64,000 nt of DNA from Macrostomum hystrix (GCA_950097015.1 CATNEN010000012.1:310001-374000); one strand, 5' to 3'. Positions 2,630 through 52,415 are shown, numbered from the stretch's first letter. Numbers and translations are program-made. The notes: generated from the sequence alone by a model not told the origin.

Positions 2630-2768
2630 TTACAGCTGCAATCTCTTACTCCTTGAGCTGGTCTATTTTTACAAATAGAGGATTCCAGTGCCATTAACTT
2701 GAATTTAATATTCTCTGCTAATGAAAAATTCCACTTTGCTGCCTTGTTAAACTTGAGTGATTTTCGAG

Positions 2769-3012: not shown

Positions 3013-3048
3013 TCTTTAAATTTGTCTAACATATTTCATTCTTATGTT

Positions 3049-16875: not shown

Positions 16876-16957
16876 GCTTAGATAATAAGGATTTTTAACA
16901 TGTTTTGCCTAGATAAACCAGTATAGAATTCGCGCAAGTTTTAACCGTCACTTGCAG

Positions 16958-31830: not shown

Positions 31831-32121
31831 CTTGAGCAGCCTGCAATATATGCGCCCAGCAATAACCTTTTGTTCACTTTTGGGGCACAATACTCATTAA
31901 TGACAAACACTCAGGCCAGTTGTGGCGCTTTCTATTACCAGGATTTTTTAATAGCATTTCCGAACGTTTGTATTCTATTGTAAAAGCTAAATATATAGAT
32001 CAGCCTTAACTCTAATCCCTAACACTTTCTAGCGAGAACCTAGAAGTAAGCTATAAAAGGACATTTCCAAAAAGGTAATCCGTTTTTAGTTATAACAACA
32101 AAATTGTTACTTCAGTGCTCA

Positions 32122-32203
32122 GACGAGGTGGCCGAGTGGTTATGGCGATGGACTGCTAATCCATTGGGGTTTCCCCGCGTGGGTTCGAATCCCATCCTCG
32201 TCG
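32122..32203 (+). tRNA. tRNA-Ser(GCT): tRNA-Ser, anticodon GCT
   Basis: 82 nt; acceptor stem GACGAGG/CCTCGTC, anticodon arm ATGGA-CTGCTAA-TCCAT, long variable arm, GGTTCGAATCC T-loop; T run at about 32211 as Pol III terminator. Confidence 0.96.
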
Positions 32204-34049
32204 AGCAAAATTTTTGATCGACGCATCGAACTTCTCTAGAAATTTGCTATTTTTATATAAGCAACATTTTTCAAACGTTCGTCAAAAGCTAAACTAATGG
32301 GGATTATATGATAAAACTTTTTGATCACCACTGCTAACTCGTTTGGATGTGAATACACGTTTTACACAACATATCGGTAGGCGAATTTCGATTTGTGAAT
32401 TTCTCATTTCTGGTAAGGTGAGGAAAACCTGAAGTAACAAAGAATAGCAAAATGGTAATACAACAGTAAACGTTCTGCTAAAAAGAATGCGCTTTTTCGC
32501 AAAACGAAAATATCTCTCATAAAAGATTATGGTTTAGTGAGATGGTTGTTTATAAATAAAGTAGTATCCTACGTGTAAACATAACATTTTATAGTATATT
32601 TTTTCTTTAGCTATCAGAATATATAGTAAAACATTTTATCATACTAAAAACATAAAATATATAATTTCAAGCCAAAAACTACACTAAAAGCTTTGTATTT
32701 TTGTTTTACGACTTATTAAGTTTTTCACGCATTGTCCAATTTAAAAGGGATTCGTTTAAAACCACAAAAATGTATAATTCTACGAATAGCTACATTTACA
32801 GACAACAGCGGAGTCTAAATGACAAGTCATTTCAGTGACATTATGTTTTGGTGTTAACTGTTTCTTGCATACAAATGCCATTTCGGTCACTAAATTAGTT
32901 TTAAGCAATTTATTCGTTTCTTAGCTATAATTTTTACTTTGACTGTTGCATATTGTAAATTACTGTAAGAATTAGATTGTCAAAAATCTTTAATTCCAGA
33001 GACCAAAAAAATTTCCTTAATTTAAGACTACTGAACTAATTTGTTTGGTCATAGATACAGAAAAGTACTAATGTTTCTAGTGAAACAGTTAAAAACTTTT
33101 AAGCATTATTTCTAGAATCTATAAATTTCTGAAAATTGTATTCAATTTTCATTTTAGTAGGCCTACTATACTAAGACTACTGGTAAGTTATCAAGTTTTT
33201 ATTGGCTTTTAGGCTTTAAATACATAATTATTACGATTTTGTTTGTTCTCTAATCGCCAAATATTATATTCATTGTGATGATAACTCATAACAGAAGTTC
33301 AATTTATTGCTGAAGCATTTGCATTAGCTATTTCTGTTCACTAAGAGCAAGCCATATTTTGCAAAAGTATAATACTTAACTTTACAACCTTTCATGTTTC
33401 GTTTTTTTCTTGTATTTTAAACTTATTGTACAAAATCTGATTTATATGTTGTAAACATCTTATATTACAATATAGTCACTATAAATTAGGCCTATATTTT
33501 AAATCAAACCCAAAATAGACATCAATGAAATTCACCAAATAAACTTTTTTAAGTTGGTATCATGCTAGAATTAAGTTGAGATGCATTCTTCATTTTATGA
33601 TAAATTATACCAGACAGAATAATTGCTTTAAGGCTCTATTCTAAATTGTGCCAAGTTGTTTAATTTGCAGTTTTACAACTGTAATTATTAAAAAGTTTTT
33701 TCATCATTATAACAAGCAAAAGCAGAAAAGAATAGCTGAATATAAAAAAGTATACTTTATGTAAACAGACTTTGTTTATGATATTACGTTTTCAGTTGAC
33801 AACTATATATTCATAGTGGCTTGGAAGTCTAATTTAATGTGTTGCATTAAATGCTACCATTTTTGCAACATAACATATACACAATTACACAAATCTTACA
33901 TTAAGGCACTTAAGCAGACATTTTATCTGCTAACTATGCCAGGATTGTATTGATATTTTAACTTTATGCTAGAAATTTCCTACATAAACTAAATAATCTA
34001 GTCTATTCTTTATAGAATAGCTTTATTATCAGTTAAGGTTAGACTAGAA

Positions 34050-35067: not shown

Positions 35068-38000
35068 ATGGCTTGTGAAATTGCACAATTCAGTGGAAAC
35101 ATTGCTGGCAACAGTGGCGCCTCCTCGGCTAACTTTTCTCCCCTGACCCTATTTGAATGTACCATCACTAACGCCCAGATGCTGATCGAATCCATGGCCG
35201 ATAGGGAATTGCTCACAGCCCTGCGCATAGCCAGCGGCCTGCACACGCACATTGTTGGCATTATCGAGCCTCGCTGCGAGCGGGCCTTTGCCCGCAGTGA
35301 CGCCCACTCTGCCTGCTTATTGGCCGCGGCCGCTAATACCTCGTCAACTTCGTCTTCGCCCCTGCCTGCCGCCTTGTCCACTGTCCTAACAAAGACGGCT
35401 AATGGTGGCGCTTCCACTCGACCGAAATCTGAATTCGATAGCTCGGTACTGGCCGCGGCAGCTTCAGCCACCGCCGCTCGGAGCATCTCATTGTTTGGCA
35501 GCAGCAGCGTCAAAGAGGAACAATTACTTATCGAAGACGAAGAGGACTCGATGGACGACTGCCTGATTATGGAAGAGGACTCCTCCTTGCCAGCCGCCGC
35601 CGCCACATCGGCTTCAGCTATTGCCGCGGTGCCCACCTCAAGGAAGCGACCTCGACAGGAGGCGGCCGCCGCGGTCGCTGCTCCTAGTCTGCAGGAACTG
35701 TCGTCTGGCGCGTCTCTGGGCGGCGGCAATAACGAGTGCCGCATGGCTCTGCGCAACTCCTACAAAGAATTGAAGGGCAACGGACCGCATCTGTTCAACT
35801 TCTCTTTGCCGTACGCTACACGAATGTGGTCTCTTGATTCTTTTTTTAACCCCTCATCTGATCGTTTAAGTTTGTGGGTTCGAAATCTATCCCACCAATT
35901 AGTATTTCATCTATAAAAAAGCGAAATTAATTTATTCTTTCTTCAATCTAATCCTCCTAGACGTGCCATGCATATTTTCCCTCCAATCGCTTTGTAGCTA
36001 CACGGATCCCGTTAACCAGCGCGTGGCGGAGCAGGTCATGACGCACGCCCAGAAACAATTAAAGAGTCCCGGAATGCCGCAGGACATCTGGCTGAGTGAG
36101 CCCTGACTATTTTAGTGTCTATTTTTATACTCATACACAGAAGCAAATAGTCTTTAGATAGAATTTCAGATGTTGATAGTCTGGCAAGCCTTTGTTTGTA
36201 CACTAAAATGGGCCTTTATCCTTGCATTTGGTGACCTTCAGTTGATTAATTAAATGGTGCCGTTCGAATATAGTAATTATCCTATTTTTGTCTGCATAAT
36301 CGTGGATTATTAATCCATTGATTGAGCTAGCCTATTATGAATTAATCAGCCAATTAAACTTTACTTGAATTTTTTGCTAAACAGTGAGTGTTTGCTTGCC
36401 TTTCACTTTTGTTCGCACGTTTAACAATTTAACAACGCAGCTAATTAAAAATGAAGGTAACCTATCTACGTTTTGATTGGTCACGATATGGCAAGTATTC
36501 GATTAAAAAAAGAAACAAGAATATTATTTCTATATTTTGAATACTTTTAACACAAAATAATTTTAGCATTGGCGAGCGAATATTACTCTGTGATTAAAGA
36601 CGATCTGCATAAAAATAAGCTGCGCATTCGAAGAATCCGCTACAAACAGAAGGTAGCACGGCACAGCGTTTTCTGCTTTAAACCTTCTAACCAGTTCGTG
36701 CTTGCTTATCACGACACTGTCTGACAGTCGGTAATCACCCCTTCCCACTGTCTGTCATTACCCCTTCCCACTGTCTGTCATTACCCCTTCCCACTGTCTG
36801 TCATTACCCCCTCCCACTGTCTGTCATTACCCCCTCCCACTGTCTGTCATTACCCCTCCCACTGTCTGTCATTACCCCTTCCCACTGTCTGTCATTACCC
36901 CCTCCCACTGTCTGTCATTAACCCTTCCCACTGTCTGTCATTACCCCTTCCCAATGTCTGTCATTACCCCCTCCCACTGGTTGTCATTACCCCTTCCCAC
37001 TGTCTTAATCACCCCCTCCCACTGTCTGTCATTACCCCCTCCCACTGTGTTAATCACCCCTCCCACTGTCTTAATCACCCCCTCCCACTGTCTTAATCAC
37101 CCCCTCCCACTGTCTTAATCACCCCCTCCCACTGTCTTAATCACCCCCTCCCACTGTCTGTCATTACCCCCTCCCACTGTGTTAATCACCCCTCCCACTG
37201 TCTTAATCACCCCCTCCCACTGTCTTATCACCCCCTCCCACTGTCTTATCACCCCCTCCCACTGTCTTATCACCCCCTCCCACTGTCTTATCACCCCCCC
37301 CTATCCCCCCCACTGTCTTATCACCCCCTCCCACTGTCTTATCACCCCCTCCCACTGTCTTAATCACCCCCTCCCACTGTCTTAATCACCCCCTCCCACT
37401 GTCTTATCACCCCCTCCCACTGTCTGTCATTACCCCCTCCCACAGTCGGTAATCACCCCTTCCCACTGTCTGTCATTACCCCTTCCCACAGTCGGTAATC
37501 ACCCCTTCCCACTGTCTGTATCACCCTAATCCCTAACTACAGTCAGCAACTGCATCTTTCTACTGTCTCATTACTGAAACTGTGGCTAAGACCTACACAA
37601 CCATTATCTGAGCGGAAGGTAGTTTAAATCTAGTCTAAGTCACAGTTCCCATTTGTTTATTTTATAACAGCTATTTCTATAGCTTTTTTAGTTGATTAAA
37701 TTTCTGAGTGTTCTAAACTCGATGTAAATTTTATTTTTTTCCCATCAACTCAAGCGACACCATTCGACTGTTCAATTGCCAATTGCACACTACTCATCAG
37801 AAGTTAGTAGTAGACAAAGTATAATGCATGAACATTTTTACATAAAGACAGACAAATCGACACCTGTGTAATATTTGTAGGTTCGTATTTTGAGTTTTAC
37901 TGCACCATGCAGCGAGTTGTGCAGAGCAGGCGCTGCAGCAACAAGCTCAACATGTGCCGACTGCGTAGCCGGCAGAAGGTCCGCTTATAAAAGCTTGGAA

Positions 38001-38872
38001 TCTCTTTGTCTGGGGTTTGGTCCTACTATTGTCACCGAAATGTCTGTTTTTAATATTGGCACCTGGCGTGTGTTACCGACACTGGCTTAGCTTAGTTTAT
38101 CTACGTATTATAGGCCGTATGAAAATAAAGCAAAGGCAACTCAATTTGCAACACATTTTTGCAGGTGAACTGTTTGATTTTGCGCAAGATCTGAGCTCTT
38201 TTGCGCTGAAAATGCGAGAAAAATTTGCCACTGAAAAGCGTCGGCAAAGAAATCGCCAAAGAGTATGTTGCGATGGCCCTGCACCGATTCACGTTCGCCT
38301 TGTTGGCGTTTTTCGTCAAATAAATGTTATAAGTTCTAGGAAAATTACAATTTTCAAAATATGCTACTATTGCTACTAAAAGTAGAAATAGAAAGAATCT
38401 ACAAAATTTTATGACAAATTAAAAGAAACCCATTTCCCCCCACTAATTTACGGAAACAGTTGTATCAGTTCCCTCATTCTCAAATCCTAACCTTTATGCA
38501 TGTCGCCTTTAGAAATTAGCCCGTCGTCAGAAGAGCTTCGAACTTCTCGCTAGCAGCCTGTCTACTAATATGTTCGACAAGTACCGCATCCTATTGTCTA
38601 AGGACTACACATCATCAGATGAGGACGCAGCGGCTACGGACTCAACTAGCGAAGATGCTGGCGGCCTGCGCGTTCGCACCCTAGCCTGGGAGTCTGCCGA
38701 GATGGCCGATATGAAGCGTCAGCTTGACGACGCTTTCTTAGAAACCTGCGCCAATCAGAAGCAAGCTCAACAGTTGCGTAAGACGGTGCGCGACGGGGCC
38801 TGCGTCAGTAGCCGGCCGCCGCCTTCCGACTGTCCGGATTGGGCTCTTTCGGAAGACTTCAAAACTGCGTAG
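35068..38872 (+). CDS. Paralogue A of an uncharacterised protein resembling C14orf93-type proteins. Exons 35068-35810, 35998-36095, one of three alternative exons, 38513-38872
   Basis: Shares SPLTLFExTITNAQMLxESMAxREL, ECxxxxRxxYKxLKGNGPHLFxFSxP, a 98-nt exon and KLxRRQKSFEL..YTSSDE..VRxLxWES..LD..RPPP with paralogue B; splice phases consistent. Family resemblance is from memory of the motif order, not a search. Confidence 0.85.
36567..36652 (+). CDS. Paralogue A alternative exon A1 (86 nt): (T)LASEYYSVIKDDLHKNKLRIRRIRYKQK
   Basis: TTTTAG| ... AAG|GTAGC; phase 1 to 0; open frame; ends in basic RxRxKQK. Confidence 0.7.
36725..37520. repeat. 21-23-bp C-rich minisatellite (CCCACTGTCTGTCATTACCCCTT and variants)
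   Basis: Direct repeats between exons A1 and A2. Confidence 0.95.
37881..37978 (+). CDS. Paralogue A alternative exon A2 (98 nt): (S)SYFEFYCTMQRVVQSRRCSNKLNMCRLRSRQK
   Basis: TTTGTAG| ... AAG|GTCCG; phase 1 to 0; open frame. Confidence 0.72.
38165..38262 (+). CDS. Paralogue A alternative exon A3 (98 nt): (S)ELFDFAQDLSSFALKMREKFATEKRRQRNRQR
   Basis: TTTTGCAG| ... AGA|GTATGT; phase 1 to 0; if read in phase 0 (after A1 or A2) it hits TGA. Confidence 0.75.
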
Positions 38873-40782: not shown

Positions 40783-42845
40783 TGGATTTAGGGTCGCAGC
40801 ATCCATGTGAGGGGATTTAGGGTCGCAGCATCCATGTAAGGGGATTTAGGGAAGCAGCATCCATGTGAGGGGATTTAGGGTCGCAGCATCCATGTGAGGG
40901 GATTTAGGGAAGCAGCATCCATGTGAGGGGTTTTAGGGAAGCAGCATCCATGTGAGAGGATTTAGGGTCGCAGCATCCATGTGAGGGGTTTTAGGGTCGC
41001 AGCATCCATGTGAGGGGTTTTAGTGTCGCAGCATCCATGTGAGGGGTTTTAGTGTCGCAGCATCCATGTGAGGGGTTTTAGGGAAGCAGCATCCATGTGA
41101 GGGGATTTAGGGAAGCAGCATCCATGTGAGAGGATTTAGGGTCGCAGCATCCATGTGAGGGGTTTTAGGGTCGCAGCATCCATGTGAGGGGCTTTAGTGT
41201 CGCAGCATCCATGTGAGGGGTTTTAGGGAAGCAGCATCCATGTGAGGGGATTTAGGGTCGCAGCATCCATGTGAGGGGTTTTAGGGAAGCAGCATCCATG
41301 TGAGGGGATTTAGGGAAGCAGCATCCATGTGAGGGGTTTTAGGGTCGCAGCATCCATGTGAGGGGTTTTAGGGTCGCAGCATCCATGTGAGGGGTTTTAG
41401 GGAAGCAGCATCCATGTGAGGGGATTTAGGGTCGCAGCATCCATGTGAGAGGATTTAGGGTCGCAGCATCCATGTGAGGGGATTTAGGGTCGCAGCATCC
41501 ATGTGAGAGGATTTAGGGTCGCAGCATCCATGTGAGAGGATTTAGGGTCGCAGCATCCATGTGAGGGGATTTAGGGTCGCAGCATCCATGTGAGGGGATT
41601 TAGGGTCGCAGCATCCATGTGAGGGGTTTTAGGGAAGCAGCATCCGTGTGAGGGGTTTTAGGGAAGCAGCATCCATGTGAGAGGATTTAGGGTCGCAGCA
41701 TCCATGTGAGGGGATTTAGGGTCGCAGCATCCATGTGAGGGGATTTAGGGTCGCAGCATCCATGTGAGGGGATTTAGGGTCGCAGCATCCATGTGAGAGG
41801 ATTTAGGGTCGCAGCATCCATGTGAGGGGATTTAGGGTCGCAGCATCCATGTGAGGGGTTTTAGGGTCGCAGCATCCATGTGAGGGGTTTTAGGGTCGCA
41901 GCATCCATGTGAGGGGTTTTAGGGAAGCAGCATCCATGTGAGGGGATTTAGGGTCGCAGCATCCATGTGAGAGGATTTAGGGTCGCAGCATCCATGTGAG
42001 GGGATTTAGGGTCGCAGCATCCATGTGAGAGGATTTAGGGTCGCAGCATCCATGTGAGGGGATTTAGGGTCGCAGCATCCATGTGAGGGGTTTTAGGGTC
42101 GCATCATCCATGTGAGGGGTTTTAGGGAAGCAGCATCCATGTGAGGGGATTTAGGGAAGCAGCATCCATGTGAGGGGTTTTAGGGAAGCAGCATCCATGT
42201 GAGGGGTTTTAGGGAAGCAGCATCCATGTGAGGGGATTTAGGGAAGCAGCATCCATGTGAGGGGTTTTAGGGAAGCAGCATCCATGTGAGGGGTTTTAGG
42301 GAAGCAGCATCCATGTGAGGGGTTTTAGGGAAGCAGCATCCATGTGAGGGGTTTTAGGGAAGCAGCATCCATGTGAGGGGTTTTAGGGTCGCAGCATCCA
42401 TGTGAGGGGTTTTAGGGTCGCAGCATCCATGTGAGGGGTTTTAGGGAAGCAGCATCCATGTGAGGGGATTTAGGGTCGCAGCATCCATGTGAGGGGTTTT
42501 AGGGAAGCAGCATCCATGTGAGGGGATTTAGGGAAGCAGCATCCATGTGAGAGGATTTAGGGTCGCAGCATCCATGTGAGGGGATTTAGGGAAGCAGCAT
42601 CCATGTGAGGGGTTTTAGGGAAGCAGCATCCATGTGAGGGGATTTAGGGTCGCAGCATCCATGTGAGGGGTTTTAGGGAAGCAGCATCCATGTGAGGGGA
42701 TTTAGGGAAGCAGCATCCATGTGAGGGGTTTTAGGGTCGCAGCATCCATGTGAGGGGTTTTAGGGAAGCAGCATCCATGTGAGGGGTTTTAGGGAAGCAG
42801 CATCCATGTGAGGGGTTTTAGGGTCGCAGCATCCATGTGAGGGGA
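40783..42845. repeat. 29-bp G-rich minisatellite (GCAGCATCCATGTGAGGGGATTTAGGGTC) containing TTAGGG
   Basis: About 70 direct repeats. Confidence 0.97.
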
Positions 42846-42998: not shown

Positions 42999-45900
42999 AT
43001 GGCAGACGTTCTGGCGCCTCACTCTAGCCTTCTGCCTCCGGGCAATAGTTTCTCTCCGCTGACGCTATTCGAGTCCACCATCACCAACGCCCAGATGCTG
43101 GTGGAGTCCATGGCCGAGCGGGAGCTGTTCTCCGCCTTGAAGATTATCGGCAATCTGCACAGCCACGTGGTGCACTCCATGGAGCCGCGCTACTGTCGCG
43201 CCTTTGATCGTAGCGACCGCCTAGCCGAACTGGAGGCAGCTGGCCTTGTTGCCAGCGTCTCCGGACAGCAGCAGCAACATCAGCAGCAGCTGCTGCATCG
43301 AGAATCGACAGCCGCTTCGTCCATGTCTGTGGGGATCAGCGCCAAGGAGGAGAAGGCCGCCTCGCTAGGTGATCTTGGCGGCGCTAGCAGCGTTCTTGGC
43401 GCCGCTCTTGGCGCCATTAAGGTCAGCTTTGCTTAATTTAGTATTGCTCAGACTGTATGTAATCAGTGGGTCTTTGACCTCCCAGGTAATAGTCGATGGA
43501 TAATCGATCTGGGTCTTTGTCCTCCCCAGGTAATAATCTAGGGATAACTGATCTGGGTATTTCTCCTCTCGGTTAATAGTCTAGGGATAACTGATCTGGG
43601 TATTTCTCCTCTCGGGTAATAGTCTAGGGATAACTGATCTGGGTCTTTGTCTTCCTCTGGTAATAGTCTAGGGGGAACTGATCTGGGTCTTTGTCTTCCT
43701 CTGGTAATAGTCTAGGGGGAACTGATCTGGGTCTTTGTCTTTCTCTGGTAATAGTCTAAGGATAACTGATTTGGGTCTTTGTCCTCCCCAGATAATACTC
43801 GAGATAGTCTGTGTGTTCTTGACATCCTCTTGTCATTGTTACTAAGGATCATTGACCTACCTGTCTTGCCCTTGTACTGCTTTGGCTACTAAATATTGAG
43901 CCTACAAATATAATTAGAATTCCCCTAGCGCTGCACTCGCCACTGCCCGCCAATCTTCAGGTTGAAGGCGACGAATACGAAGCGGACGAGGAAGAAGAAG
44001 ATGATTGCATGATCACGGAAGAGCTGAACGACGACAGTCTTAGTGCCGGATTCCCCTACGCCAAGATGCCCCGACTGGACTTATCCGCTGACTATTCCGG
44101 CGCCGGTGCTAGCGCCTTTGGCATTGGCGGCGGCGGTGGAGGCGTTGGCGGAGACGTGCCAGCCGAATGCAAGACAATCATGCGACGCGCCTATAAAACA
44201 CTGAAAGGAAATGGACCGCACCTGTTCGACTTTAGTATGCCGTGAGTTGGCCTTCGAAACTTGTGCAATTTTTCATGAACCAGCCAGTGAGTAATCGCAA
44301 TTATAATCAACAACAATGGCCGACATGATTATGTGATTAAATTTTGTGAGCATAAATGTTTTGCTTATATCGATGGTTTTTTGTCACCGGGTCCCCGACG
44401 GGAATCGTTGAATATCTCGACGAAGCCGATGTTGTGTGATTCTGGAAGTTGTCTCTTCGGATAGAGCGCAAATTTTAGCCCGTGTTCTGCATTTTCACGG
44501 CGATTGGTTGAATATTTTGAGAGAATATTTTCAGTTTAACAGTAAAAAATGTGGATATTTGAAGCACCAATGGTCTTTATACAGTTGAGCTTTGCGACGT
44601 TTTCGCCCCATTGGGCCAAATGTGCAGCCATTGCGCGGCGCATATCAAGGCTGCGTACGGCTGTTCAGTCCACGGACTGGGGGGACGCCACACCCACCCT
44701 CAAGTACCCCAGCTAATGCTGGCACCCATTTAAGGACACAGATTGTTCCAGTGGAGTCTCGAATCGAACCCCCGACCTTCAAGTCGAGATTCCGACACTA
44801 TAACCACTAGGCTACAACTCCTAAGCATCTACGCAGATTTGTGTTATTTTCTGCGCCATCTCACACCGCAGATTCTCTGCCGAGGCCAATCAACAAGTAG
44901 CCGCCATGGTCATGTCCAAGGCCAAGGAAATGGCGGAAGGCAAAGGCTGGCCGGATGACGTTTGGCAAAGTGAGTCTCAAATTGCTGTATTTCTATCACC
45001 TGTGTACTAGCCAACTTAGTTTCATAAATGCAGGAGGTGCGAGAGGCTGTTAATTGCATACCTTAGTTTAGCGAATCAACATTTGTCCTTTGTTATCGAT
45101 TGATAAAATCATTAAAAGTGGAGAATAAAATTTACTTATTGCAATTAAGTCATAGCCTGAGTCTAATTATCCCGGCTAGAGATTTTCAATTGCGTCTCTT
45201 GCACTGCCTGCATAGCAAATAAAAGTATTAGCTTAGTACATACCATTGTGCATTTGAAATACTCTCTTAATACTACTTGCAAGTACAGGCACTATATTGT
45301 TGCTAAAAAGTAAAAACAAGTCTTCTAACCCACTGTTTATTGTCTTTCTCCTTGCCTACACTTGGTCTGGAAACGTCGCAAGTTCTTTGGCTTGAGCAAA
45401 TTTTATCTATAGTGTTAGGCTTTTAGGTTTAGAAAAAATTAATAACTACCGAAATTTCTGTTTCATCTCCTTTACTTGAGTTCATAAATTAATTTTGTCT
45501 CCATGCGTGCTCTAATATTTATTAAATTGTTGCCTAAAGACTGACGCAACATTTTGCGATCAAAACTAAACTAACCTGTATGAATTAATTAACTAATCAA
45601 TCATTAATTGCTAAATTGTTGACCTATTCTCTTTGCCAGGTCTGACGTGTGTTTTTGCTCGAATTATGCAATATAGCTGCATTGTACTTCTGATCGCTGA
45701 ATATAAAGCTGTATTTGTTACGGCCTAGATAGAACTTATAATATGCAACACCCTGTGTTGTAGGATTGCTAAGGCGCTGTGTAGCCATGTTCGCTGAGTT
45801 CCGTCGGGACATGCGGCTTAGATTGAGAAATTCAGTAAGTGTTTTCAAGTGTGGCGCTTAATTGATCATGTTTAAATGGACTCAGCGGCTGGGTAGGTGT

Positions 45901-48900
45901 GGCCAAAAATACTGGGTTACCAGGCTAAATCTCGAATGTAATCATTTCTTCTTACTACAAACGGTACATCTGCACATCGCACAGCCAAATGGTTCAATTA
46001 ATTTACAAGCAAAGTCAAATCAACTTTGTTGGCTTTGAAACTCAATAATATAAGCTCAGTGTGCAATAGTGCACGCTGCTTATGTACGGTGACATTGGCT
46101 TAAGGGATTCCTAGTTTAGATGTCCTTTAGCGATGAAGGAAACTAAGGCTGCTGCGTTTCCAGAAAATGTCTGGCTTCCCTTGGTCCAAGCAACAACCTT
46201 TATTTTAAGGTCGTTACCTTGTGTCAAAATTAATTTCAGAGCTACCCAAAGACGGCCGTATTAGTTTTATATTTTCGTCTTTTAGATTAAATGCGAGAAA
46301 TCGTCTAAAATCTTATGTAAGTAACTCAGTAAAGGTCTATTGAGCAAGCTATGTAAAATAGTTAAACTGTCCTTCTACCACTGAGACAGCTCAAACGATG
46401 AGGTTCCGTTTCCAGGCGAAGTTAAATTTCAAAAATTAAAATAAACCTTTTGCTGCACCGTTTTCTAAACAAACTAAGGCCGATTACACACCAAAATCAC
46501 CATGCAACAACAACGCATTGAATTTCAGAACTGCCTAAAGAGGGTCGCATACCTATTATTTTCAAATCGTTTAGAACTGACGCTAAGAAACGTTTTAAAG
46601 CTCTTGTAAGTTGGCCTTGTCGGAATCTGCTTCAGAAATGCGAGCATTTAATCCTTATTTGCTGTCTTTGTTGCTTCTTAATTTCTTGCTTTCTTTATGA
46701 TCTTGCCGCTGCATTTCCTCTTAAGTAGCAGTTCTGCTGTGTAACTTAGGATTTCAGTCGAGAGGGTGATTTTTGTGTCCCTGAGCAATATGCTTCATTT
46801 CCAATGGCTTCGGTTTTACCCGGCATTAGCTTTAGTAGAAAAAATTCAAGAGAGTTTGGCTGCCTCCAGTCCATGGACTGAACAGCTGTACATAGCCTTT
46901 AGATGCGCCGCGAACTAGCTGCGGCAGCGTCACTGGCTGTACATCAACCTATATGGTGCTAAAAGTACATGCAAGTGTTTAGAAGAGTCATCGTTTTCTA
47001 TTAAATATCCCAGAAAATGTATTAAGCATTGAAACTATGATTTCAGGACTGCCGAGTGAAAACCGAACTTCCACAGTGTTTTCTAAGTTGCGCTTCAGCT
47101 CTAGACACACACTGAAACTCAATGTGAGAGTTTAGTTCTCTTTCTCACCAGCTCATTCTCACATTTGCTTTGTCATTTTCAAACTTTAAGCAAAGATATT
47201 TCGGGGCTTTTCGGACAAAGTACAGGATTGTAGAATGCAGGCTTCATGTGCACTGAAATCTAAAAATAGTCCATCTTTCTTGTGACGTTTCTGAGGTAAA
47301 GAGAATGAACAGAACTACCCCCCTTGGACTATTACGTCGCTAATATCTGACAGCCGGAACACATGTGTCAAACTCCGATTGCAGATTTGCCGTACAAGGC
47401 CAGACCGGACAGAGTATTTTGTCATATACGCAGCGCACTTAGGGCAAAGTACAGAGAAAATGTAAGGATTGCCGCCTATTATTTGTATAGTGTTGCGAGC
47501 TAATTGTTGGTCCTCTAAAGTTGACGCAGGTGGAAATGGGATTTTGAATCTCCGCCTTAGGAGAAATTGCTCGTGTCCTTGAATTAAGACGCCAAATTCC
47601 ACTTTACTTTATTCAGTTCAGCCAGCTGCAAAATTGGTAGGTCTTACCCAACTGATAAGTCTCATTTCTGTCTTATCTATTTACTGATTTCTGTTGTAGC
47701 CTTCTAGAAAGCTAATAAAATTCGCAGTTTAATTGGGATCCATTGATTTCTTCATCTGAGCTATGACGACGTTTTCAGCGCTAGACATCATCATTAGGCA
47801 GTGAATTCTTCGTATTTTATTAGCCATGTTATTGGCAATTTGCAGAGCTGCCCTACGCGTCTCGCACTATATTCCTGTTTATTGACTTGCGCAGGAAGAT
47901 GCGTTTCCGATTTAGAAGCTTTGTAAGCTCTGCTTTGTCATGCTTTAGCTTAGAATAATGGCATTTATTCTAGGGCGGGATACTGCGTGAGACTGCGGAC
48001 AGAGATGAAGCCTCAGCAGCTTGCGATGTTTGCCCCCCCCATACCCCCACCTTGTTAGCAATTTTCACAAATATTCATCCTGATTATACAAACAAAATAC
48101 TGATCCCGCTTGCAGACCTCCCCAAGGACAGTCGTATTAACTATCTGCACTCTAATTTTGGTACTAAAATTCGTGCAAAATATCGGATTAGCGTAAGTCC
48201 AGCGTAATTAGAAAAGAATTTGCGACTTTCATTGCAGCCTTCTTTAGAAAGAATCTTACAATAAAGATCGAGTTTTCAAACCGCTTTTACTGCCGCTCAT
48301 TCCATTCCGCTTCCTAAAAAGGGATTCCTACCCCGTGTAGGCCGCTGTACATATTTCAAAACTTTCGCTCAAGAAGCCGCATGAAACTAAGGCTGAATGT
48401 AAGTAGCCTGTTGCGCGCATGCATGCTTTATTTGAGAAATTTCTAATTTAATTAGATCCACGTCTACTAAGCTACAACTGGCGCCGTTTCCAAACAAAAA
48501 CCAATTGAGGTCAAATAAAAGATTAAGAAAGTTTTTAAAAAATCCTCAGCTAAATAGCCTCACATTAGCTAGCAAAATACGAAATTTCTGCGCCTAATTT
48601 TCAGGGATTCCATGCCGAGGCCGCATACTATACATGTTCTCCGATTTTTCACTAAAGGCCCGGTCTAAATTCAAGCAGCTAGTGAGTAGTTTCGGCCCAT
48701 CAGAGTAGCCATATATTGCTGCGATTGTTTAAACACGCCTAGTTGACGTTTCCACTCCAAAACCAGAGTGCAAAATCCAATAGATGGTTAATGCGAACTC
48801 TCCATATTTATGCACATTCAATTGGAATAATATCGCATTGTAGACTTACCCAAGGCTGGCAGGTTGTCTGTAATATTTAGCGATTTCAAACGACAAGTGC

Positions 48901-51900
48901 ACGACAAGTACCGCGGTCTAGTAAGATTACACAATTTAAAGCATAGCTTTGTCTCTAGTATAGTTGCTGAAGCCAAAGACTCTGACAATGGATGTTGTCA
49001 GGCGACTCGCCTCCGAGGTTAACGGTAGAAAGACCATGCAATTTTACCCTTCAAATACCCACTGCGCTTTGCAATTAACTAACCTCCAAAGCCGTGCGAC
49101 GTCAGCATTGTCGATGCCGATGTTTTGTGCTTCTGGGAGGTTAGTTCATCGGATAGAGTGGAGAATTTTAACCCATACTCAGGATTTTCATGGCGATAGG
49201 TTTAATATTTTAGCAGATAAAATATTGAAAAATACTGAAAAATAATAAAAAGATGGGTATCTGGAATACCCCCTGGTCTTTCTACTGTTAATGATTTTCC
49301 AGTATTTTTCTGGCTGCTTTAGCGATTTCTTGCTGTCAATCTAGTCTTGCCGCTGTATCTCTGTCAGTCGCTACCTAATCATTTTGTTCTCTAATGCAGG
49401 GCTGCCAAAGGCTGGCCGACTCTGCGAGATATTCAGAGACTTTGGGAAACAGATTCGGACTAAACTGCGGCTAAGCGTAAATTGCGATTATCATCGATTT
49501 CATTGCTAAAGCCATAGGAATCCGAGCCCTACTTTATATATATAATTGCAGAAGAACTGCCCATTCTGCCTATTTCGCTGACTCCTGAGCACACACGCAC
49601 ATGGATACTGTACGCAGGCACACGCTCACCCAGTTGTGCACATCTGCCCTGATTTTTTCATCGTCAGGCAGTGTACACTCACTGTGCCGCCCTTAATAAG
49701 TGTGGCCTCGCCGCGGAATCGAGCTCAAGGACCTTGGTGCGGGGGGGCAAACGCGTTAGACCGCTCCGCCACTCGCCCCCCCTAAGCCCTACTATCAATC
49801 TTGTCACCTTTCATCTTTTAATTCCGCTTCGAGAGGCTAGAGCTTCGGACTCGGGCCGAGAAGTCGAAAGTTCGAACCTCAGACCAAGAGAGACAGTTTG
49901 TATGCTTGAGCACGGCAATTAATTTGCCTAGAGTGCTTTATTTCACCCAGCTGTAAAATGGGTACCAGCAATAGCTAGGGGAGAAATTTATCTGTGTAGC
50001 GGTCTCCCCTGTCCAGAATCCAGATTGAATATCTGTAAACAGCCTTTCGGTGCGTTGCACAATGGCTGTAGCTGTGCCACTGGCTGTACATCTGGCCCAA
50101 CTGGGCTAGGTGTCGTTTCTATATCTTTAATAAATAAGCTTTTTTACAATATCTTAGAATCCCAAATTAGTACTATTTCCCTAATTTAATGCCTTCTTAC
50201 TGCAGGGCTGCCAAAGACTGGCCGGCTGTGCGAGATTTTCTGGGACTTTGGGAAACAGATTCGACTCAAACTGCGGCTGACTGTAATTAGTTCCATCTGT
50301 GGCATCGATTTGCTGAATGCATGTGCCATGCCGCCAATGCGGGAAAGCTCTGACTGCCTCAATTCTGATTCCTTCCCGTATTTTCTCTATTTTCTATTTG
50401 ATGATCTGTCTGGAGACACTAGTTGTTTAAGACATTTGGTTAGCCGTTATTACAGACTCCATCCATTGCTGTTAATACTATTTATCATTACTTCCTGCAC
50501 AGGATTGCCAAGGACTAGCCGAATGATTGACATTTTCTGGGACTTTAGAAAGATTATGCGCTCCAAATTGCGCAACCAAGTAATTAATTGGGGTTAAGTT
50601 TCCAGTGGCACAGTTCTTTTATAGACGTATTATCTTCCTCTATTCGGTAAGAGTATCGTGCTAATTTGAAATGGTACGACATTTTCATGCCTTTCATCTA
50701 TCATACACTCATAATACACTATTGTACAGTCCCACCCCGTCCCTACCTGCAACCCTAATCCCTTGCCTCTGCAGTTTCATCCCATTTTAATCATTACCCT
50801 CCCTTCAGCTGAATCCCTTCCCTCCGTTCAGCTGAATCCCTTCCCTCCGTTCAGCTGAATCCCTTCCCTCCGTTCAGCTGAATCCCTTCCCTCCGTTCAG
50901 CTGAATCCCTTCCCTCCGTTCAGCGGAATCCCTTCCCTCCGTTCAGCTGAATCCCTTCCCTCCGTTCAGCTGAATCCCCTCCCTCCGTTCAGCTGAATCC
51001 CTTCCCTCCGTTCAGCTGAATCCCTTCCCTCCGTTCAGCGGAATCCTTCCCTCCGTTCAGCTGAATCCCTTCCCTCCGTTCAGCTGAATCCCTTCCCTCC
51101 GTTCAGCCTAATCCCTTCCCTCCGTTCAGCTGAATCCCTTCCCTCCGTTCAGCTGAATCCCTTCCCTCCGTTCAGCTGAATCCCTTCCCTCCGTTCAGCT
51201 GAATCCCTTCCCTCCGTTCAGCTGAATCCCTTCCCTCCGTTCAGCTGAATCCCTTCCCTCCGTTCAGCTGAATCCCTTCCCTCCGTTCAGCTGAATCCCT
51301 TCCCTCCGTTCAGCTGAATCCCTTCCCTCCGTTCAGCGGAATCCTTCCCTCCGTTCAGCTGAATCCCTTCCCTCCGTTCAGCTGAATCCCTTCCCTCCGT
51401 TCAGCCTAATCCCTTCCCTCCGTTCAGCTGAATCCCTTCCCTCCGTTCAGCTGAATCCCTTCCCTCCGTTCAGCTGAATCCCTTCCCTCCGTTCAGCTGA
51501 ATCCCTTCCCTCCGTTCAGCTGAATCCCTTCCCTCCGTTCAGCTGAATCCCTTCCCTCCGTTCAGCTGAATCCCTTCCCTCCGTTCAGCTGAATCCCTTC
51601 CCTCCGTTCAGCTGAATCCCTTCCCTCCCATCAGCCTAATCCCTTCCCTCCGTTCAGCTGAATCCCTTCCCTCCGTTCAGCTGAATCCCTTCCCTCCGTT
51701 CAGCCTAATCCCTTCCCTCCGTTCAGCGGAATCCCTTCCCTCCGTTCAGCTGAATCCCTTCCCTCCGTTCAGCTGAATCCCTTCCCTCCGTTCAGCTGAA
51801 TCCCTTCCCTCCGTTCAGCTGAATCCCTTCCCTCCGTTCAGCGGAATCCTTCCCTCCGTTCAGCTGAATCCGTTTTCCCCTTGCAGTAAAACCAATGTTC

Positions 51901-52415
51901 TGTAACAAAAACACTTTCTCATGGCCTGCAGTCTCCCTTTCCTTGCCCATCTACTCTTTTCCCCTGTTCCCCAGCCTCTCAGAGCGTCCCGGTGTAGGGG
52001 AACCCAATTCCAGAGTGCATTGTTAGTTTCATAACTCCTAAGCCTTCACCATTCGCCGGCGGTACAGAAGCTCAACCGGCGTCAGAAGAGCTTCGAACTA
52101 GTTGCCACCAGCCTGAGCTCAGATGAGCTAGAAAAATTCCGCGTCATCCTGACCCGCGACTACACCAGCTCGGACGAGGAGTGCGGCTCCGGCGGCTCCG
52201 ACCAGCTGCGGGTGCGCGAACTGTCCTGGGAGTCGGACGAGGTCAAACGATTGAAACGCCAACTGGATCAGGTCTACATGGACAATTGCGCCACCACCAA
52301 GCAGAAGCAGCAGCTGAGCCGCTGCATCCGGGATCCGCTGCGCTCCAGGTCGCAGCGCCCGCCGCCAGACGGCGCTCCCGACTGGGCGCTGAAGCCGCCG
52401 ATGAGGAAGACCTAA
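42999..52415 (+). CDS. Paralogue B of the C14orf93-like protein. Exons 42999-43421, 43961-44241, 44872-44969, one of 13 alternative exons, 52068-52415
   Basis: Homology to paralogue A; phases 0, 2, 1, then 0 after the cassette; the 98-nt exon matches A in length and phase; last exon KLNRRQKSFEL..YTSSDEE..VRELSWES..*. Confidence 0.87.
43470..43790. repeat. About 44-bp minisatellite in paralogue B intron 1 (GGTAATAGTCTAGGGATAACTGATCTGGGTCTTTGTCTTCCTCT)
   Basis: About 7 direct repeats. Confidence 0.9.
44590..44815 (-). mobile_element. tRNA-derived SINE family 2
   Basis: Reverse complement starts GTAGCCTAGTGGTT (A box) .. GGGTTCGATTC (B box), then AAATGGGTGCCAGCATTAGCTGG; related to 49830-50140. 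Confidence 0.75.
45764..45834 (+). CDS. Paralogue B alternative exon B1 (71 nt): (R)LLRRCVAMFAEFRRDMRLRLRNS
   Basis: TTGTAG| ... |GTAAGT; phase 1 to 0; two codons shorter but keeps FxxF..RxRxR. Confidence 0.7.
46240..46316 (+). CDS. Alternative exon B2 (77 nt): (K)LPKDGRISFIFSSFRLNARNRLKSY
   Basis: ATTTCAG| ... |GTAAGT; open frame in phase 1. Confidence 0.85.
46529..46605 (+). CDS. Alternative exon B3 (77 nt): (K)LPKEGRIPIIFKSFRTDAKKRFKAL
   Basis: ATTTCAG| ... |GTAAGT. Confidence 0.85.
47047..47123 (+). CDS. Alternative exon B4 (77 nt): (R)LPSENRTSTVFSKLRFSSRHTLKLN
   Basis: ATTTCAG| ... |GTGAGA. Confidence 0.82.
47385..47461 (+). CDS. Alternative exon B5 (77 nt): (N)LPYKARPDRVFCHIRSALRAKYREN
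   Basis: TTGCAG| ... |GTAAGG. Confidence 0.83.
47846..47922 (+). CDS. Alternative exon B6 (77 nt): (K)LPYASRTIFLFIDLRRKMRFRFRSF
   Basis: TTTGCAG| ... |GTAAGC. Confidence 0.84.
48116..48192 (+). CDS. Alternative exon B7 (77 nt): (N)LPKDSRINYLHSNFGTKIRAKYRIS
   Basis: CTTGCAG| ... |GTAAGT. Confidence 0.85.
48322..48398 (+). CDS. Alternative exon B8 (77 nt): (R)IPTPCRPLYIFQNFRSRSRMKLRLN
   Basis: Weak AAAAAG| acceptor, strong |GTAAGT donor; motif conserved. Confidence 0.75.
48605..48681 (+). CDS. Alternative exon B9 (77 nt): (R)IPCRGRILYMFSDFSLKARSKFKQL
   Basis: TTTTCAG| ... |GTGAGT. Confidence 0.85.
48844..48920 (+). CDS. Alternative exon B10 (77 nt): (N)LPKAGRLSVIFSDFKRQVHDKYRGL
   Basis: ATTGTAG| ... 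|GTAAGA. Confidence 0.85.
49400..49476 (+). CDS. Alternative exon B11 (77 nt): (R)LPKAGRLCEIFRDFGKQIRTKLRLS
   Basis: AATGCAG| ... |GTAAAT. Confidence 0.86.
49540..49785 (-). mobile_element. SINE family 1 copy 3 (partial) inside the exon array
   Basis: Same reverse-complement head and hairpin as 6386-6712. Confidence 0.85.
49830..50140 (+). mobile_element. SINE family 2 copy with a central CACCCAGCTGTAAAATGGGTACC block (resembles Deu/Nin-domain SINEs)
   Basis: tRNA-like head (GTTCGAACC), conserved central block, A/T tail; superfamily label is from memory. Confidence 0.7.
50206..50282 (+). CDS. Alternative exon B12 (77 nt): (R)LPKTGRLCEIFWDFGKQIRLKLRLT
   Basis: ACTGCAG| ... |GTAATT; 13 mismatches to B11. 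Confidence 0.86.
50503..50579 (+). CDS. Alternative exon B13 (77 nt): (R)LPRTSRMIDIFWDFRKIMRSKLRNQ
   Basis: TGCACAG| ... |GTAATT. Confidence 0.86.
50800..51872. repeat. 23-bp pyrimidine-rich minisatellite (CAGCTGAATCCCTTCCCTCCGTT) in the last intron of paralogue B
   Basis: About 46 direct repeats. Confidence 0.97.

What the first reader, a model, noticed from the sequence alone, without database searches (positions are those of the whole stretch)
45764..50579. Hidden array of 13 tandem, mutually exclusive exons (Dscam/lola-like) in paralogue B
Seen: between the constant exon 44872-44969 (ends phase 1) and the last exon 52068 (starts phase 0) lie 13 short AG..GT-bounded segments starting at 45764, 46240, 46529, 47047, 47385, 47846, 48116, 48322, 48605, 48844, 49400, 50206 and 50503. 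Twelve are exactly 77 nt and one is 71 nt. All are stop-free in the required phase. The twelve 77-nt exons share the pattern [RKN][LI]PxxxRxxxxFxx[FLI]xxxx[RKH]x[KR][LFY][RK]xx with invariant P3 and R7 (F12 is H in one, position 22 is T in one), while nucleotides and flanks have diverged strongly. Since 77 and 71 are both 2 mod 3, including none, two or three cassettes breaks the frame; one keeps it (four, seven, ... would only arithmetically). Established: this is the architecture of mutually exclusive exon clusters such as arthropod Dscam1. Inference: an isoform-diversification system yielding at least 13 proteins from one non-immunoglobulin gene. I know of no description of such a cluster in this protein family or lineage. 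It is invisible in the ORF track.
Basis: partly seen in the sequence, partly recalled or inferred. Interest (0 to 1): 0.93.

Follow-up and report, generated by a model that had tools for sequence, protein, structure and literature searches.

The report
Flatworm gene with twelve swappable exons
A Macrostomum flatworm gene of unknown function carries 12 (perhaps 13) alternative versions of one 77-base exon. RNA data show them spliced in one at a time, apparently chosen by the same RNA base-pairing trick that insects use in Dscam1, which I found described in no flatworm.

Summary
Twelve 77-nt segments and one 71-nt segment, all AG..GT-bounded and stop-free, lie between exon 44872-44969 and the last exon at 52068.

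They are old protein-coding duplicates. Identity by codon position is 0.45/0.56/0.29, and no decayed copy exists elsewhere in the window.

Assembled RNA contigs give GT..AG joints from 44969 to five cassettes (46529, 47047, 47385, 48116, 48322). Cassettes 46529 and 48116 are also joined to 52068. One 135-nt contig is exon-cassette-exon. No cassette-to-cassette joint was seen.

New here: a 20-nt element (45367-45386) in the first array intron is complementary to sequences 66-112 nt upstream of the acceptor of nine of the twelve cassettes. It is 100% conserved in a paralogous M. lignano locus whose introns are otherwise unalignable. That locus has five collinear cassettes with their own selectors. 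This is the Dscam1 exon-6 docking-site/selector layout.

The gene belongs to a Macrostomum-expanded family with a C14orf93-like C-terminal module. The cassette encodes a basic helix with a constant buried face and a variable exposed face.

The mechanism is untested at the bench, and only 5-7 cassettes have RNA support. The scan found a similar nine-exon array before, on another piece of this genome (s1-273987). I found no published description.

The parts
42999..43421 (+). Exon 1 coding part of paralogue B (ATG to 5' splice site): N-terminal helical region FSPLTLFE..NAQML
   Evidence: Open frame and GT at 43422. Homologous to residues 1-132 of P0002. The boundary is not checked by RNA.
43961..44241 (+). 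Exon 2 (acidic stretch and start of the C-terminal module)
   Evidence: The loose end before 44872 in X3, X5 and X9 equals the last 30 nt up to 44241. The acceptor at 43961 is inferred.
44586..44606 (+). Extra selector-like element in intron 2, upstream of the constant exon; role unknown
   Evidence: Strongest complement to the docking 20-mer in the window (dG -25.1). Not conserved in L001.
44872..44969 (+). Constant exon 3, ends in phase 1 (last base A)
   Evidence: A contig covers exactly 44872-44969. All joints leave from 44969.
45367..45386 (+). Candidate docking site CTGGAAACGTCGCAAGTTCT
   Evidence: Best of 388 windows of the first intron for pairing with cassette-upstream regions. 20/20 identical in L001 and L003. 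Unique in the window at up to 3 mismatches, 0 expected.
45764..45834 (+). 71-nt divergent cassette (no LPxxxR, no selector)
   Evidence: AG..GT and open. HMM E 8e-4 over its last 17 residues. A contig starts 7 nt before 45764 and runs on into the intron. Selector dG -11.0, p 0.55.
46146..46164 (+). Selector for cassette 46240
   Evidence: dG -21.6, beyond all 1500 null windows; 75 nt before the acceptor.
46240..46316 (+). Cassette, 77 nt
   Evidence: No joint seen.
46396..46416 (+). Selector for cassette 46529 (moderate)
   Evidence: dG -16.3, p 0.04; contains CGTTTCCAGG.
46529..46605 (+). Cassette, 77 nt, used
   Evidence: Joint 44969->46529 in X2, X3, X4, X5 and X9. The loose end behind 46605 equals the start of the last exon. 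One 135-nt contig is 29+77+29.
47047..47123 (+). Cassette, 77 nt, used; no convincing selector
   Evidence: Joint 44969->47047 in X3 and X5. dG -14.6, p 0.12.
47278..47296 (+). Selector for cassette 47385
   Evidence: dG -21.7; 88 nt before the acceptor. Paired to the docking site in one of six long-range MFE folds.
47385..47461 (+). Cassette, 77 nt, used
   Evidence: Joint 44969->47385 in X3.
47757..47779 (+). Selector for cassette 47846
   Evidence: dG -24.3, 19 bp; 66 nt before the acceptor.
47846..47922 (+). Cassette, 77 nt
   Evidence: Best match of L001 cassette 16142. No joint seen.
48014..48035 (+). Selector for cassette 48116
   Evidence: dG -22.3; 80 nt before the acceptor.
48116..48192 (+). 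Cassette, 77 nt, used
   Evidence: Joint 44969->48116 in X2, X3, X4 and X9. The loose end behind 48192 equals the start of the last exon in X1 (144 nt) and X9.
48214..48231 (+). Selector for cassette 48322
   Evidence: dG -20.4; 90 nt before the acceptor.
48322..48398 (+). Cassette, 77 nt, used
   Evidence: Joint 44969->48322 in X5.
48475..48493 (+). Selector for cassette 48605
   Evidence: dG -20.0. Also found as an inverted repeat with 45362-45384 by the repeat finder (I8).
48605..48681 (+). Cassette, 77 nt
   Evidence: No joint seen.
48738..48755 (+). Selector for cassette 48844 (moderate)
   Evidence: dG -16.9, p 0.02.
48844..48920 (+). Cassette, 77 nt
   Evidence: No joint seen.
49400..49476 (+). 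Cassette, 77 nt; no clear selector within 150 nt
   Evidence: An X2 contig ends at 49476 with 27 further letters that were not identified. Candidate distant partners at 49095-49107 and 48964-48979.
50102..50122 (+). Selector for cassette 50206 (moderate)
   Evidence: dG -18.5, p 0.009; 83 nt before the acceptor.
50206..50282 (+). Cassette, 77 nt, probably used
   Evidence: An X9 contig has 19 letters before 50206 and runs on into the intron. 83% identical to cassette 49400.
50503..50579 (+). Cassette, 77 nt; no selector found
   Evidence: dG -9.6. No joint seen.
50797..51871 (.). 23-nt minisatellite (47 copies) filling most of the last intron
   Evidence: It blocked read laying across the last intron.
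52068..52415 (+). Last exon: conserved C-terminal domain (KLNRRQKSFE...) and stop
   Evidence: Loose ends behind 46605 and 48192 match its first 27-30 nt. 126 homologues at E<=1e-3.

Best explanation
This is a real cluster of mutually exclusive exons in a Macrostomum gene; every named homologue is M. lignano.

The gene belongs to a lineage-expanded family. It has an N-terminal helical region, a disordered acidic middle and a C14orf93-like C-terminal module.

Between constant exon 3 and the last exon lie twelve homologous 77-nt exons and one divergent 71-nt exon. One is included per mRNA, giving 408-aa proteins (406 aa with the 71-nt exon). These differ only in a 26-residue basic segment, which forms the first part of a long helix leading into the C-terminal module. 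The conserved residues of the segment fall on one helical face and the variable ones on the other.

The choice most likely works as in arthropod Dscam1 exon 6. A conserved 20-nt docking site in the intron after the constant exon can pair with only one selector at a time. A selector lies 66-112 nt upstream of each variable exon. That pairing loops out the cassettes in between and activates the acceptor behind it. The 77-nt length (2 mod 3) is a second safeguard, because zero or two cassettes shift the frame.

Shown: the anatomy, coding constraint, use of at least five cassettes, single inclusion, complementarity and its conservation.
Inferred: that pairing causes the choice, that all cassettes are used, and what the variable helix binds.
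For: Anatomy and coding constraint:
- Coordinates, frame and motif.
- Identity by codon position 0.45/0.56/0.29.
- Excess of the 77-nt length and leave-one-out HMM recovery.
- No decayed copies anywhere in the window.

RNA:
- GT..AG joints from 44969 to 46529, 47047, 47385, 48116 and 48322.
- Loose ends behind 46605 and 48192 equal the start of exon 52068.
- One 135-nt contig is 29+77+29.
- No cassette-cassette joint in six runs from two studies.

Frame: a skip gives a stop 19 codons into the last exon, and all 78 double inclusions give premature stops.

Docking site and selectors:
- An unbiased scan puts the best pairing window at 45360-45368.
- The same 20-mer is the only alignable island between this intron and the intron of paralogous locus L001 (20/20, E 5e-7), and it is identical in L003.
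- Pairing energy of the 150 nt upstream of the 12 cassettes averages -18.0 kcal/mol, against -11.4 +/- 0.76 for means of 12 null windows. Six cassettes exceed all 1500 null windows.
- Along the whole 64-kb + strand, every window with dG <= -19.5 lies between 44501 and 48600.
- Of the 16 matches to the 13-mer other than the docking site itself (up to 3 mismatches), 10 are + strand inside the 7.1-kb array. By my arithmetic on the tool's chance figure, about 0.7 would be expected there.
- Selector-to-acceptor gaps are 66-112 nt.
- Wobble-compatible changes are enriched, 26/53 against 34% in the null.

Paralogous locus: L001 has five 77-nt cassettes. Four are collinear with 47047, 47385, 47846 and 48116 (for 14543/47385 by order; its best sequence match is 48605), and three of the five have strong selectors.

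Protein: AlphaFold model of the C-terminal module has pLDDT 90 and places the cassette inside helix 56-101. Conserved positions 8, 11, 12, 15, 19, 22 and 23 have helical periodicity. The module matches human C14orf93 residues 300-492 (Foldseek E 1.6e-4).
Against: - No listed joint for 45764, 46240, 47846, 48605, 48844, 49400, 50206 or 50503. Hints only for 45764, 49400 and 50206.
- Joints to the last exon are shown for two cassettes only, because a minisatellite blocked laying reads across the last intron.
- The RNA evidence is assembled contigs, which drop rare forms, so occasional multi-cassette or skipped mRNAs cannot be excluded.
- Three cassettes (47047, 49400, 50503) and the 71-nt exon lack a convincing selector, yet 47047 is used.
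- The docking site is invariant, so true covariation cannot be scored. The wobble enrichment is modest (by my binomial estimate, p about 0.015).
- Minimum-energy folding of the long pre-mRNA pairs the docking site with a selector in only one of six sub-transcripts.
- The strongest complement of all lies in intron 2, upstream of the constant exon, is not conserved in L001, and the model does not explain it.
- Nothing has been tested at the bench, and the protein's function is unknown.
Confidence: 0.66

Rival explanations
1. The array is a true mutually exclusive cluster, but exclusivity comes only from the reading frame (77 = 2 mod 3) with decay of wrong products, plus ordinary splicing regulators. 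On this reading the conserved 20-mer and the upstream motifs are protein-binding sites, or relics of duplication, rather than pairing partners.
For: Every skip or double inclusion gives a premature stop. Cassette 47047 is used without a good selector. Long-range MFE folds rarely form the pairing. Tandem duplication copies the adjacent intron along with the exon (PMC6071210).
Against: The upstream motifs are the reverse complement of the 20-mer, not copies of it. A shared protein site would be in the same sense. Flanking introns have otherwise diverged to random (0.31-0.32 identity). Even the youngest cassette pair shares only about 12 nt of flank. Yet selectors persist at a fixed distance from the acceptor. 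Changes are biased to G-U-compatible ones. For 17 of the 78 double inclusions the stop falls only in the last exon, where junction-dependent decay would not act.
Confidence: 0.17
2. Only the few cassettes seen in RNA are functional. The others are silent duplicate exons on their way to decay, so real diversity is about five isoforms.
For: Listed joints exist for only 5 of 13 cassettes. The last three cassettes and the 71-nt exon have weak or no selectors.
Against: All 13 copies keep both splice sites and an open frame, and no broken copy exists. Third codon positions are saturated while first and second are kept. The unobserved cassette 47846 is the best match of L001 cassette 16142 in the collinear M. 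lignano array. The runs are small (43-50 million letters of contigs) and contigs lose rare isoforms.
Confidence: 0.12
3. Chance pseudo-exons: open AG..GT segments in a large intron with no role.
For: Seven further open AG-77-GT segments without the motif occur in the same intron.
Against: Spliced joints fall at the exact boundaries. The family signal is at E down to 1e-23. The array is conserved in a paralogous locus.
Confidence: 0.01

Closest known systems
Arthropod Dscam1 exon 6 cluster: docking site and selector sequences (Graveley 2005, from my own knowledge; PMC3535345, PMC7430681, PMC8042237, PMC8791459)
   Same: - A tandem array of homologous, equal-length exons between two constant exons, one included per mRNA.
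- One conserved docking site in the intron just after the upstream constant exon.
- A complementary selector upstream of each variable exon, so only one pairing can form at a time.
- An exon length that is not a multiple of three.
   Different: - Phylum Platyhelminthes, not Arthropoda.
- The protein is not an immunoglobulin-domain receptor. It is a C14orf93-like protein with no signal peptide or membrane segment noticed (not tested).
- 12-13 variants, not 48.
- The variable unit is a 26-residue helix, not half an Ig domain.
- No repressor (hrp36) or locus control region is known here.
- The origin must be independent.
Other clusters controlled by competing RNA structures: Drosophila 14-3-3zeta, Mhc, srp, MRP1, PGRP-LC; human ATE1 (PMC4691838, PMC6191721, PMC7797038)
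   Same: Exon choice through mutually exclusive base-pairing of intronic elements in non-Dscam genes. These are taken as evidence that the mechanism evolves repeatedly.
   Different: Those clusters have 2-8 exons and often downstream or bidirectional docking. None is reported from flatworms in the papers I could search.
Model for the origin of competing structures by tandem duplication of an exon with one arm of an intronic stem (Ivanov and Pervouchine 2018, PMC6071210)
   Same: It predicts exactly this layout: each duplicated exon carries a copy of the arm next to it, and all copies compete for the single unduplicated arm. It also predicts that docking/selector control is more widespread than known.
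   Different: It is a model, not a system. Here a single-cassette relative (L002, P0021) lacks the docking sequence, so the ancestral stem was not found.
Human C14orf93 (RTFC) and mouse 4931414P19Rik
   Same: The predicted fold of the 194-residue C-terminal module matches residues 300-492 of C14orf93 (Foldseek E 1.6e-4, probability 1.0). Uncharacterised cnidarian, brachiopod, amphioxus and fungal proteins also match.
   Different: No Pfam or sequence-level match. TM is only 0.42. No cassette array is known in C14orf93. Its biochemical function is itself unclear (PMC5322522, PMC10163356).
Schistosome micro-exon genes (from my own knowledge)
   Same: A flatworm way of making protein variants by alternative use of very short exons.
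   Different: Micro-exons are symmetric (multiples of three) and are skipped in combinations in secreted proteins. Here the exons are asymmetric, homologous and used one at a time.

Membership tests
Mutually exclusive exon cluster | Tandem, homologous exons of the same length and phase between two constant exons | tested here: met
   Twelve 77-nt exons and one 71-nt exon, all 2 mod 3, with a shared peptide motif.
Mutually exclusive exon cluster | Exactly one exon of the cluster in each mature mRNA | tested here: inconclusive
   One contig holds exon-cassette-exon. Five cassettes are joined to the upstream exon and two to the last exon. No cassette-cassette joint was seen. But the data are contigs only, eight cassettes have no listed joint, and rare forms would be lost.
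Docking-site/selector control (Dscam1 exon 6 type) | A single intronic docking site next to a constant exon, conserved among relatives | tested here: met
   45367-45386 is 20/20 identical in paralogous M. lignano loci L001 and L003, whose introns are otherwise unalignable. It is unique in the window.
Docking-site/selector control (Dscam1 exon 6 type) | A selector complementary to the docking site beside every variable exon | tested here: inconclusive
   Nine of twelve cassettes have one 66-112 nt upstream: six beyond all null windows and three at p 0.009-0.04. Cassettes 47047, 49400, 50503 and the 71-nt exon do not. In L001, three of five are strong.
Docking-site/selector control (Dscam1 exon 6 type) | Disrupting the pairing changes exon choice, and compensatory mutations restore it | not testable with these tools
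   Needs minigenes or transgenic worms.
Dscam (immunoglobulin superfamily receptor) | Ig and fibronectin domains | tested here: not met
   No Pfam domain in any exon or homologue. The predicted fold is mainly helical, with a few short strands.
lola / mod(mdg4)-type alternative 3' exon sets | Alternative terminal exons (often trans-spliced), each ending the transcript | tested here: not met
   The cassettes are internal, have 5' splice sites, and are joined to one common last exon at 52068.
C14orf93-like proteins | Shared C-terminal module | tested here: met
   The match is between predicted structures only: Foldseek E 1.6e-4 and 1.8e-4 to the human and mouse proteins, over the whole 194-residue model. 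An amphioxus C14orf93-like protein is among the AlphaFold DB cluster hits. There is no sequence-profile support.

The most novel reading that the evidence does not exclude
Docking-site/selector RNA competition arose independently in a flatworm. There it drives a 12-13-way choice of a surface helix in a lineage-expanded, C14orf93-like, possibly nucleic-acid-binding protein family. Several paralogous loci each carry their own array (12-13 here, 5 in L001, 9 reported on another piece of the genome). The family as a whole would then form a combinatorial recognition repertoire, with stochastic or cell-type-specific choice comparable to Dscam or protocadherin diversity, but inside the cell.
Probability: 0.25. 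Interest if true: 0.92.

Novelty: new member of a known kind. Interest (0 to 1): 0.8.

Why it matters
Large mutually exclusive exon arrays run by a docking site and selectors are textbook only for arthropod Dscam1. Smaller cases are known in a few insect and mammalian genes.

A 12-13-exon array with the same RNA logic, in a flatworm and in an unrelated gene, would be clear evidence that this mechanism evolves convergently from tandem exon duplication, as predicted in PMC6071210.

It also offers a compact test case: a 7-kb array and a 20-nt docking site. From my own knowledge, transgenesis is available in M. lignano.

It further points to a function for a conserved but unexplained protein module shared with human C14orf93. 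One helix face has been diversified and kept under selection, which marks it as a specificity surface.

Gene predictions miss the array or read through it. Database proteins P0001 and P0003 contain two or more cassettes in a row.

Tried and rejected
- Pfam on the exons and on ten homologues: nothing.
- ESM Atlas look-alikes for paralogue A: no score above 0.70.
- Rfam on the window: only a tRNA.
- PDB by sequence profile and by Foldseek: nothing.
- VIA-align gave only Z 4-6. This included a recurring but weak resemblance (Z about 4) of model residues 82-178 to integrase core-binding domains. I treat it as a lead only.
- A docking site in the last intron, with selectors downstream of the cassettes: no outlier.
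- Shared intronic k-mers of 10 or more: none.
- My first duplex scan timed out.
- Searching the last exon among proteins of similar length found no transcript-derived fragments with other cassettes.
- A Pol I exon did not settle the species; the best M. lignano hit was 92% over 23% of the query.
- A Logan contig with a relative gave no DNA.
- The exact docking 20-mer in metagenome contigs hit two prokaryote-like contigs without cassettes, the number expected by chance.
- Single-cassette relative L002 has no docking sequence.
- Long-range MFE folding paired the docking site with a selector in only one of six sub-transcripts.

Full report
**The observation**

I read the window directly. Twelve segments are followed by GT after exactly 77 nt. 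The first (45764) is followed by GT after 71 nt.

Each segment is stop-free in the phase left by exon 44872-44969, which ends with a single A. The first codon of every cassette is therefore A plus two cassette bases, giving K, R or N.

The peptide pattern is as described. P3 and R7 are invariant in the twelve. F12 is H in 48116, and position 22 is T in 47047.

**Is it more than chance?**

- The 7.1-kb intron holds 19 open AG-77-GT segments, against 0-10 for every other length from 65 to 89 nt.
- A profile built from eleven cassettes recovers the twelfth at E 6e-5 to 1e-23 for ten of them. Cassettes 47047 and 47385 are weak, at E 0.6-0.9.
- Pairwise identity is 0.45, 0.56 and 0.29 at codon positions 1, 2 and 3. 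The 60 nt on either side of the cassettes are at 0.31-0.32, which is random. These are therefore old duplicates. Their synonymous sites are saturated and their protein sequence has been kept.
- A profile of the twelve finds no further copy on either strand of the 64-kb window. The one exception is the last 17 residues of the 71-nt segment (E 8e-4), which lacks the LPxxxR half.

No homologous copy has lost its frame or its splice sites.

**RNA evidence**

Two look-ups found runs that hold this DNA: one run of 'organism A' (X1) and several of 'organism B' (X2-X5, X9), from two studies. All are kept as assembled contigs.

Laid on 44860-50790, they give GT..AG joints from 44969 to five cassettes:

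| Cassette | Runs with the joint |
|---|---|
| 46529 | X2, X3, X4, X5, X9 |
| 48116 | X2, X3, X4, X9 |
| 47047 | X3, X5 |
| 47385 | X3 |
| 48322 | X5 |

The letters that run on behind 46605 (X3, X5) and behind 48192 (X1 for 144 nt, X9) are AAGCTCAACCGGCGTCAGAAGAGCTTCGA(A). That is the start of the last exon at 52068.

One X3 contig of 135 nt is 29 nt of exon 3, the 77-nt cassette 46529 and 29 nt of the last exon. This is a single inclusion.

The letters before 44872 equal the end of exon 2 at 44241. No joint between two cassettes appears in any run.

There are weaker hints. One contig has 7 letters before 45764. Another has 19 letters before 50206. Both run on into the downstream intron. A third ends at 49476 with 27 further letters. 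These short ends were too short for the tool to place, and I do not count them.

Intron depth is zero in 45058-45651. It then rises along the array from about 3 to about 11. That would fit removal of the upstream intron before the downstream one, but this is inference.

I could not lay reads across the last intron. A 23-nt minisatellite (50797-51871) made the tool refuse.

**Reading frame**

With one cassette the protein is 408 aa, or 406 aa with the 71-nt exon. With none, the frame shifts and stops 19 codons into the last exon. All 78 pairs of cassettes give a premature stop. In 61 pairs the stop lies before the last junction, and in 17 it lies only in the last exon.

**The gene**

No Pfam family matches any exon or homologue.

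A full HMMER scan with the last exon found 126 proteins. Every named full-length hit is a hypothetical protein of Macrostomum lignano. The nearest (P0001) is 97% identical. It is a mis-prediction that strings two cassettes together. The window therefore comes from a Macrostomum flatworm. I could not settle the species.

Sixteen family members align over three regions:
- an N-terminal helical region;
- a low-complexity acidic middle;
- a C-terminal module of about 200 residues.

Between the invariant W of exon 3 and the KLSRRQK of the last exon, every member has a 26-35-residue basic segment. It is the least conserved part of the module. In paralogue B this segment is the cassette.

**Predicted structure**

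AlphaFold on the C-terminal module of P0002 gives mean pLDDT 90 and pTM 0.72. It places the cassette (model residues 62-87) inside one 46-residue helix, 56-101.

Across the 17 cassettes of the window and L001, conserved positions are 2, 3, 7, 8, 11, 12, 15, 19, 20, 22, 23 and 24. Positions 4-6, 9, 10, 13, 14, 17, 18, 21, 25 and 26 vary freely. From position 8 onward this is helical periodicity. I read it as a constant face that packs on the domain and a variable, exposed face. Each cassette has 6-9 K+R and 0-2 D+E.

The module matches human and mouse C14orf93 (Foldseek E 1.6e-4 and 1.8e-4). It also matches uncharacterised cnidarian, brachiopod, amphioxus and fungal proteins. No solved structure matches convincingly. 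Function remains unknown.

**How the choice is made**

I looked for a docking site by complementarity alone. A 12-mer scan of the first array intron against the inter-cassette introns put the best site at 45367-45383. A later scan of all 388 20-nt windows against the 150 nt upstream of each cassette put the top three at 45362-45366.

Only afterwards did I compare the intron with the paralogous M. lignano locus L001 (Mlig_3_7 contig NIVC01001693.1). L001 is the gene for P0002, which is 88% identical to the window's protein in the last exon. By blastn, only exons of the two loci align. A short-word search of the two first array introns found one significant island: 45367-45386, CTGGAAACGTCGCAAGTTCT, identical 20/20 to L001 12282-12301 (E 5e-7). 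It is also identical in a third locus, L003. In the window it is unique at up to three mismatches, with none expected.

With that 20-mer as probe, these results follow:
- The 150 nt upstream of the twelve cassettes give a mean duplex energy of -18.0 kcal/mol. Means of twelve random windows from elsewhere in the window give -11.4 +/- 0.76.
- Six cassettes (46240, 47385, 47846, 48116, 48322, 48605) exceed all 1500 random windows.
- Three more (46529, 48844, 50206) have p 0.009-0.04.
- Cassettes 47047, 49400, 50503 and the 71-nt exon are not distinguishable from background.
- Sliding along the whole + strand, every 150-nt window at or below -19.5 lies between 44501 and 48600.
- Of the 16 matches to TGCGACGTTTCCA other than the docking site itself (up to 3 mismatches), ten are + strand inside the array. 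By my arithmetic on the tool's chance figure, about 0.7 would be expected there.
- The paired segments end 66-112 nt before the acceptor.
- Where selectors depart from the perfect complement, 26 of the 53 changes that could be G-U-compatible are so, against 34% in the null. By my binomial estimate, p is about 0.015.
- The repeat finder independently lists 45362-45384 with 48476-48498 as an inverted repeat.

L001 and L003 each have five 77-nt AG..GT cassettes. Four are collinear with the window's 47047, 47385, 47846 and 48116. For the second pair the match rests on order, since its best sequence match is 48605. Three of the five carry near-perfect selectors 58-80 nt upstream, with dG -23 to -24, beyond all 800 null windows.

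This is the layout described for Dscam1 exon 6 (PMC3535345, PMC7430681, PMC8042237). It is also what the duplication model of PMC6071210 predicts.

**Weak points**

- The pairing is computed, not observed.
- The docking site does not vary, so covariation cannot be scored.
- Three or four cassettes lack a selector, and one of them (47047) is used.
- Minimum-energy folds of 1.2-3.6-kb stretches pair the docking site with a selector (47279-47292) in only one of six cases.
- The strongest complement in the window (44586-44606, dG -25.1) lies in intron 2, upstream of the constant exon. It is not conserved in L001. I cannot explain it.
- Eight cassettes have no listed joint.

**Prior knowledge**

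Full-text searches found no paper that links Macrostomum, flatworms or Platyhelminthes with such a cluster or with competing RNA structures.

The scan's own notes record a nine-exon array in a C14orf93-like gene on another piece of this genome. A follow-up there reached the same kind of reading (s1-273987). That is a lead, not independent evidence. The analysis here was done on this locus and on L001/L003.

**Verdict**

| Claim | My estimate |
|---|---|
| A real cluster with at least five cassettes in use | about 0.9 |
| Docking/selector pairing is the selecting mechanism | about 0.65 |
| All 12-13 cassettes are used | about 0.5 |

It is a new member of a known kind of system, in a new phylum and a new gene family.

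Noticed in passing
window 35068-38869: Paralogue A of the same family lies just upstream, in tandem. Its cassette is 98 nt (38165-38262). A second open AG..GT segment of the same length lies at 37881-37978, and another candidate starts at 36567. This may be a small array of its own, as note s1-291391 says. L001 also has an A-like gene upstream of its array gene.
   Followed up: partly
window 44586-44606: The best complement to the docking 20-mer in the whole window (dG -25.1) sits in intron 2, 265 nt upstream of the constant exon. Pairing would loop that exon out. It is not conserved in L001.
   Followed up: partly
window 44605-44731, 46863-46922, 49956-50106: Copies of one dispersed repeat: one in intron 2, and inverted fragments inside the array (60 nt at 83% complementarity). 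RNA/DNA contigs cover these stretches at depths up to about 5800, so it is a high-copy element. Such inverted pairs could also form long-range duplexes.
   Followed up: no
window 45058-50790: Intron depth in organism B runs is zero for the first 600 nt after exon 3. It then rises stepwise along the array from about 3 to about 11. This would be expected if the upstream intron is removed first and the downstream one lingers.
   Followed up: no
window 45384-45399 and 48964-48979: A 16-nt inverted repeat (94%) directly abuts the 3' end of the docking site. It pairs with a site 421 nt upstream of cassette 49400, which has no ordinary selector. This may be an extended docking site.
   Followed up: no
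window 50797-51871; also 42000-42844, 43467-43797: Minisatellites of 23, 29 and 44 nt sit inside or next to the gene. The 23-mer (47 copies, 96% matches) fills most of the last intron and contains the palindrome TTCAGCTGAA. Open-frame listings suggest many other such arrays in the window, for example 2657-4079, 16000-16900, 18500-20000 and 36691-37449.
   Followed up: no
window 49400-49476 and 50206-50282: The youngest cassette pair is 83% identical, but the similarity stops about 12 nt outside the exon on each side. This points to exon-limited gene conversion or fast intron turnover.
   Followed up: partly
window about 5000-13740: A DNA-directed RNA polymerase I subunit RPA2 gene, in many exons. 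Homologues carry PF04565, PF06883 and PF00562.
   Followed up: partly
window 32122-32203: A tRNA gene (Rfam RF00005, 64 bits) in an A+T-rich stretch (GC 0.29 over 32001-34000).
   Followed up: no
P0001, P0003 (database proteins): Public M. lignano gene predictions for this family string two or more cassettes together or read into introns. Current annotation therefore hides these arrays.
   Followed up: partly
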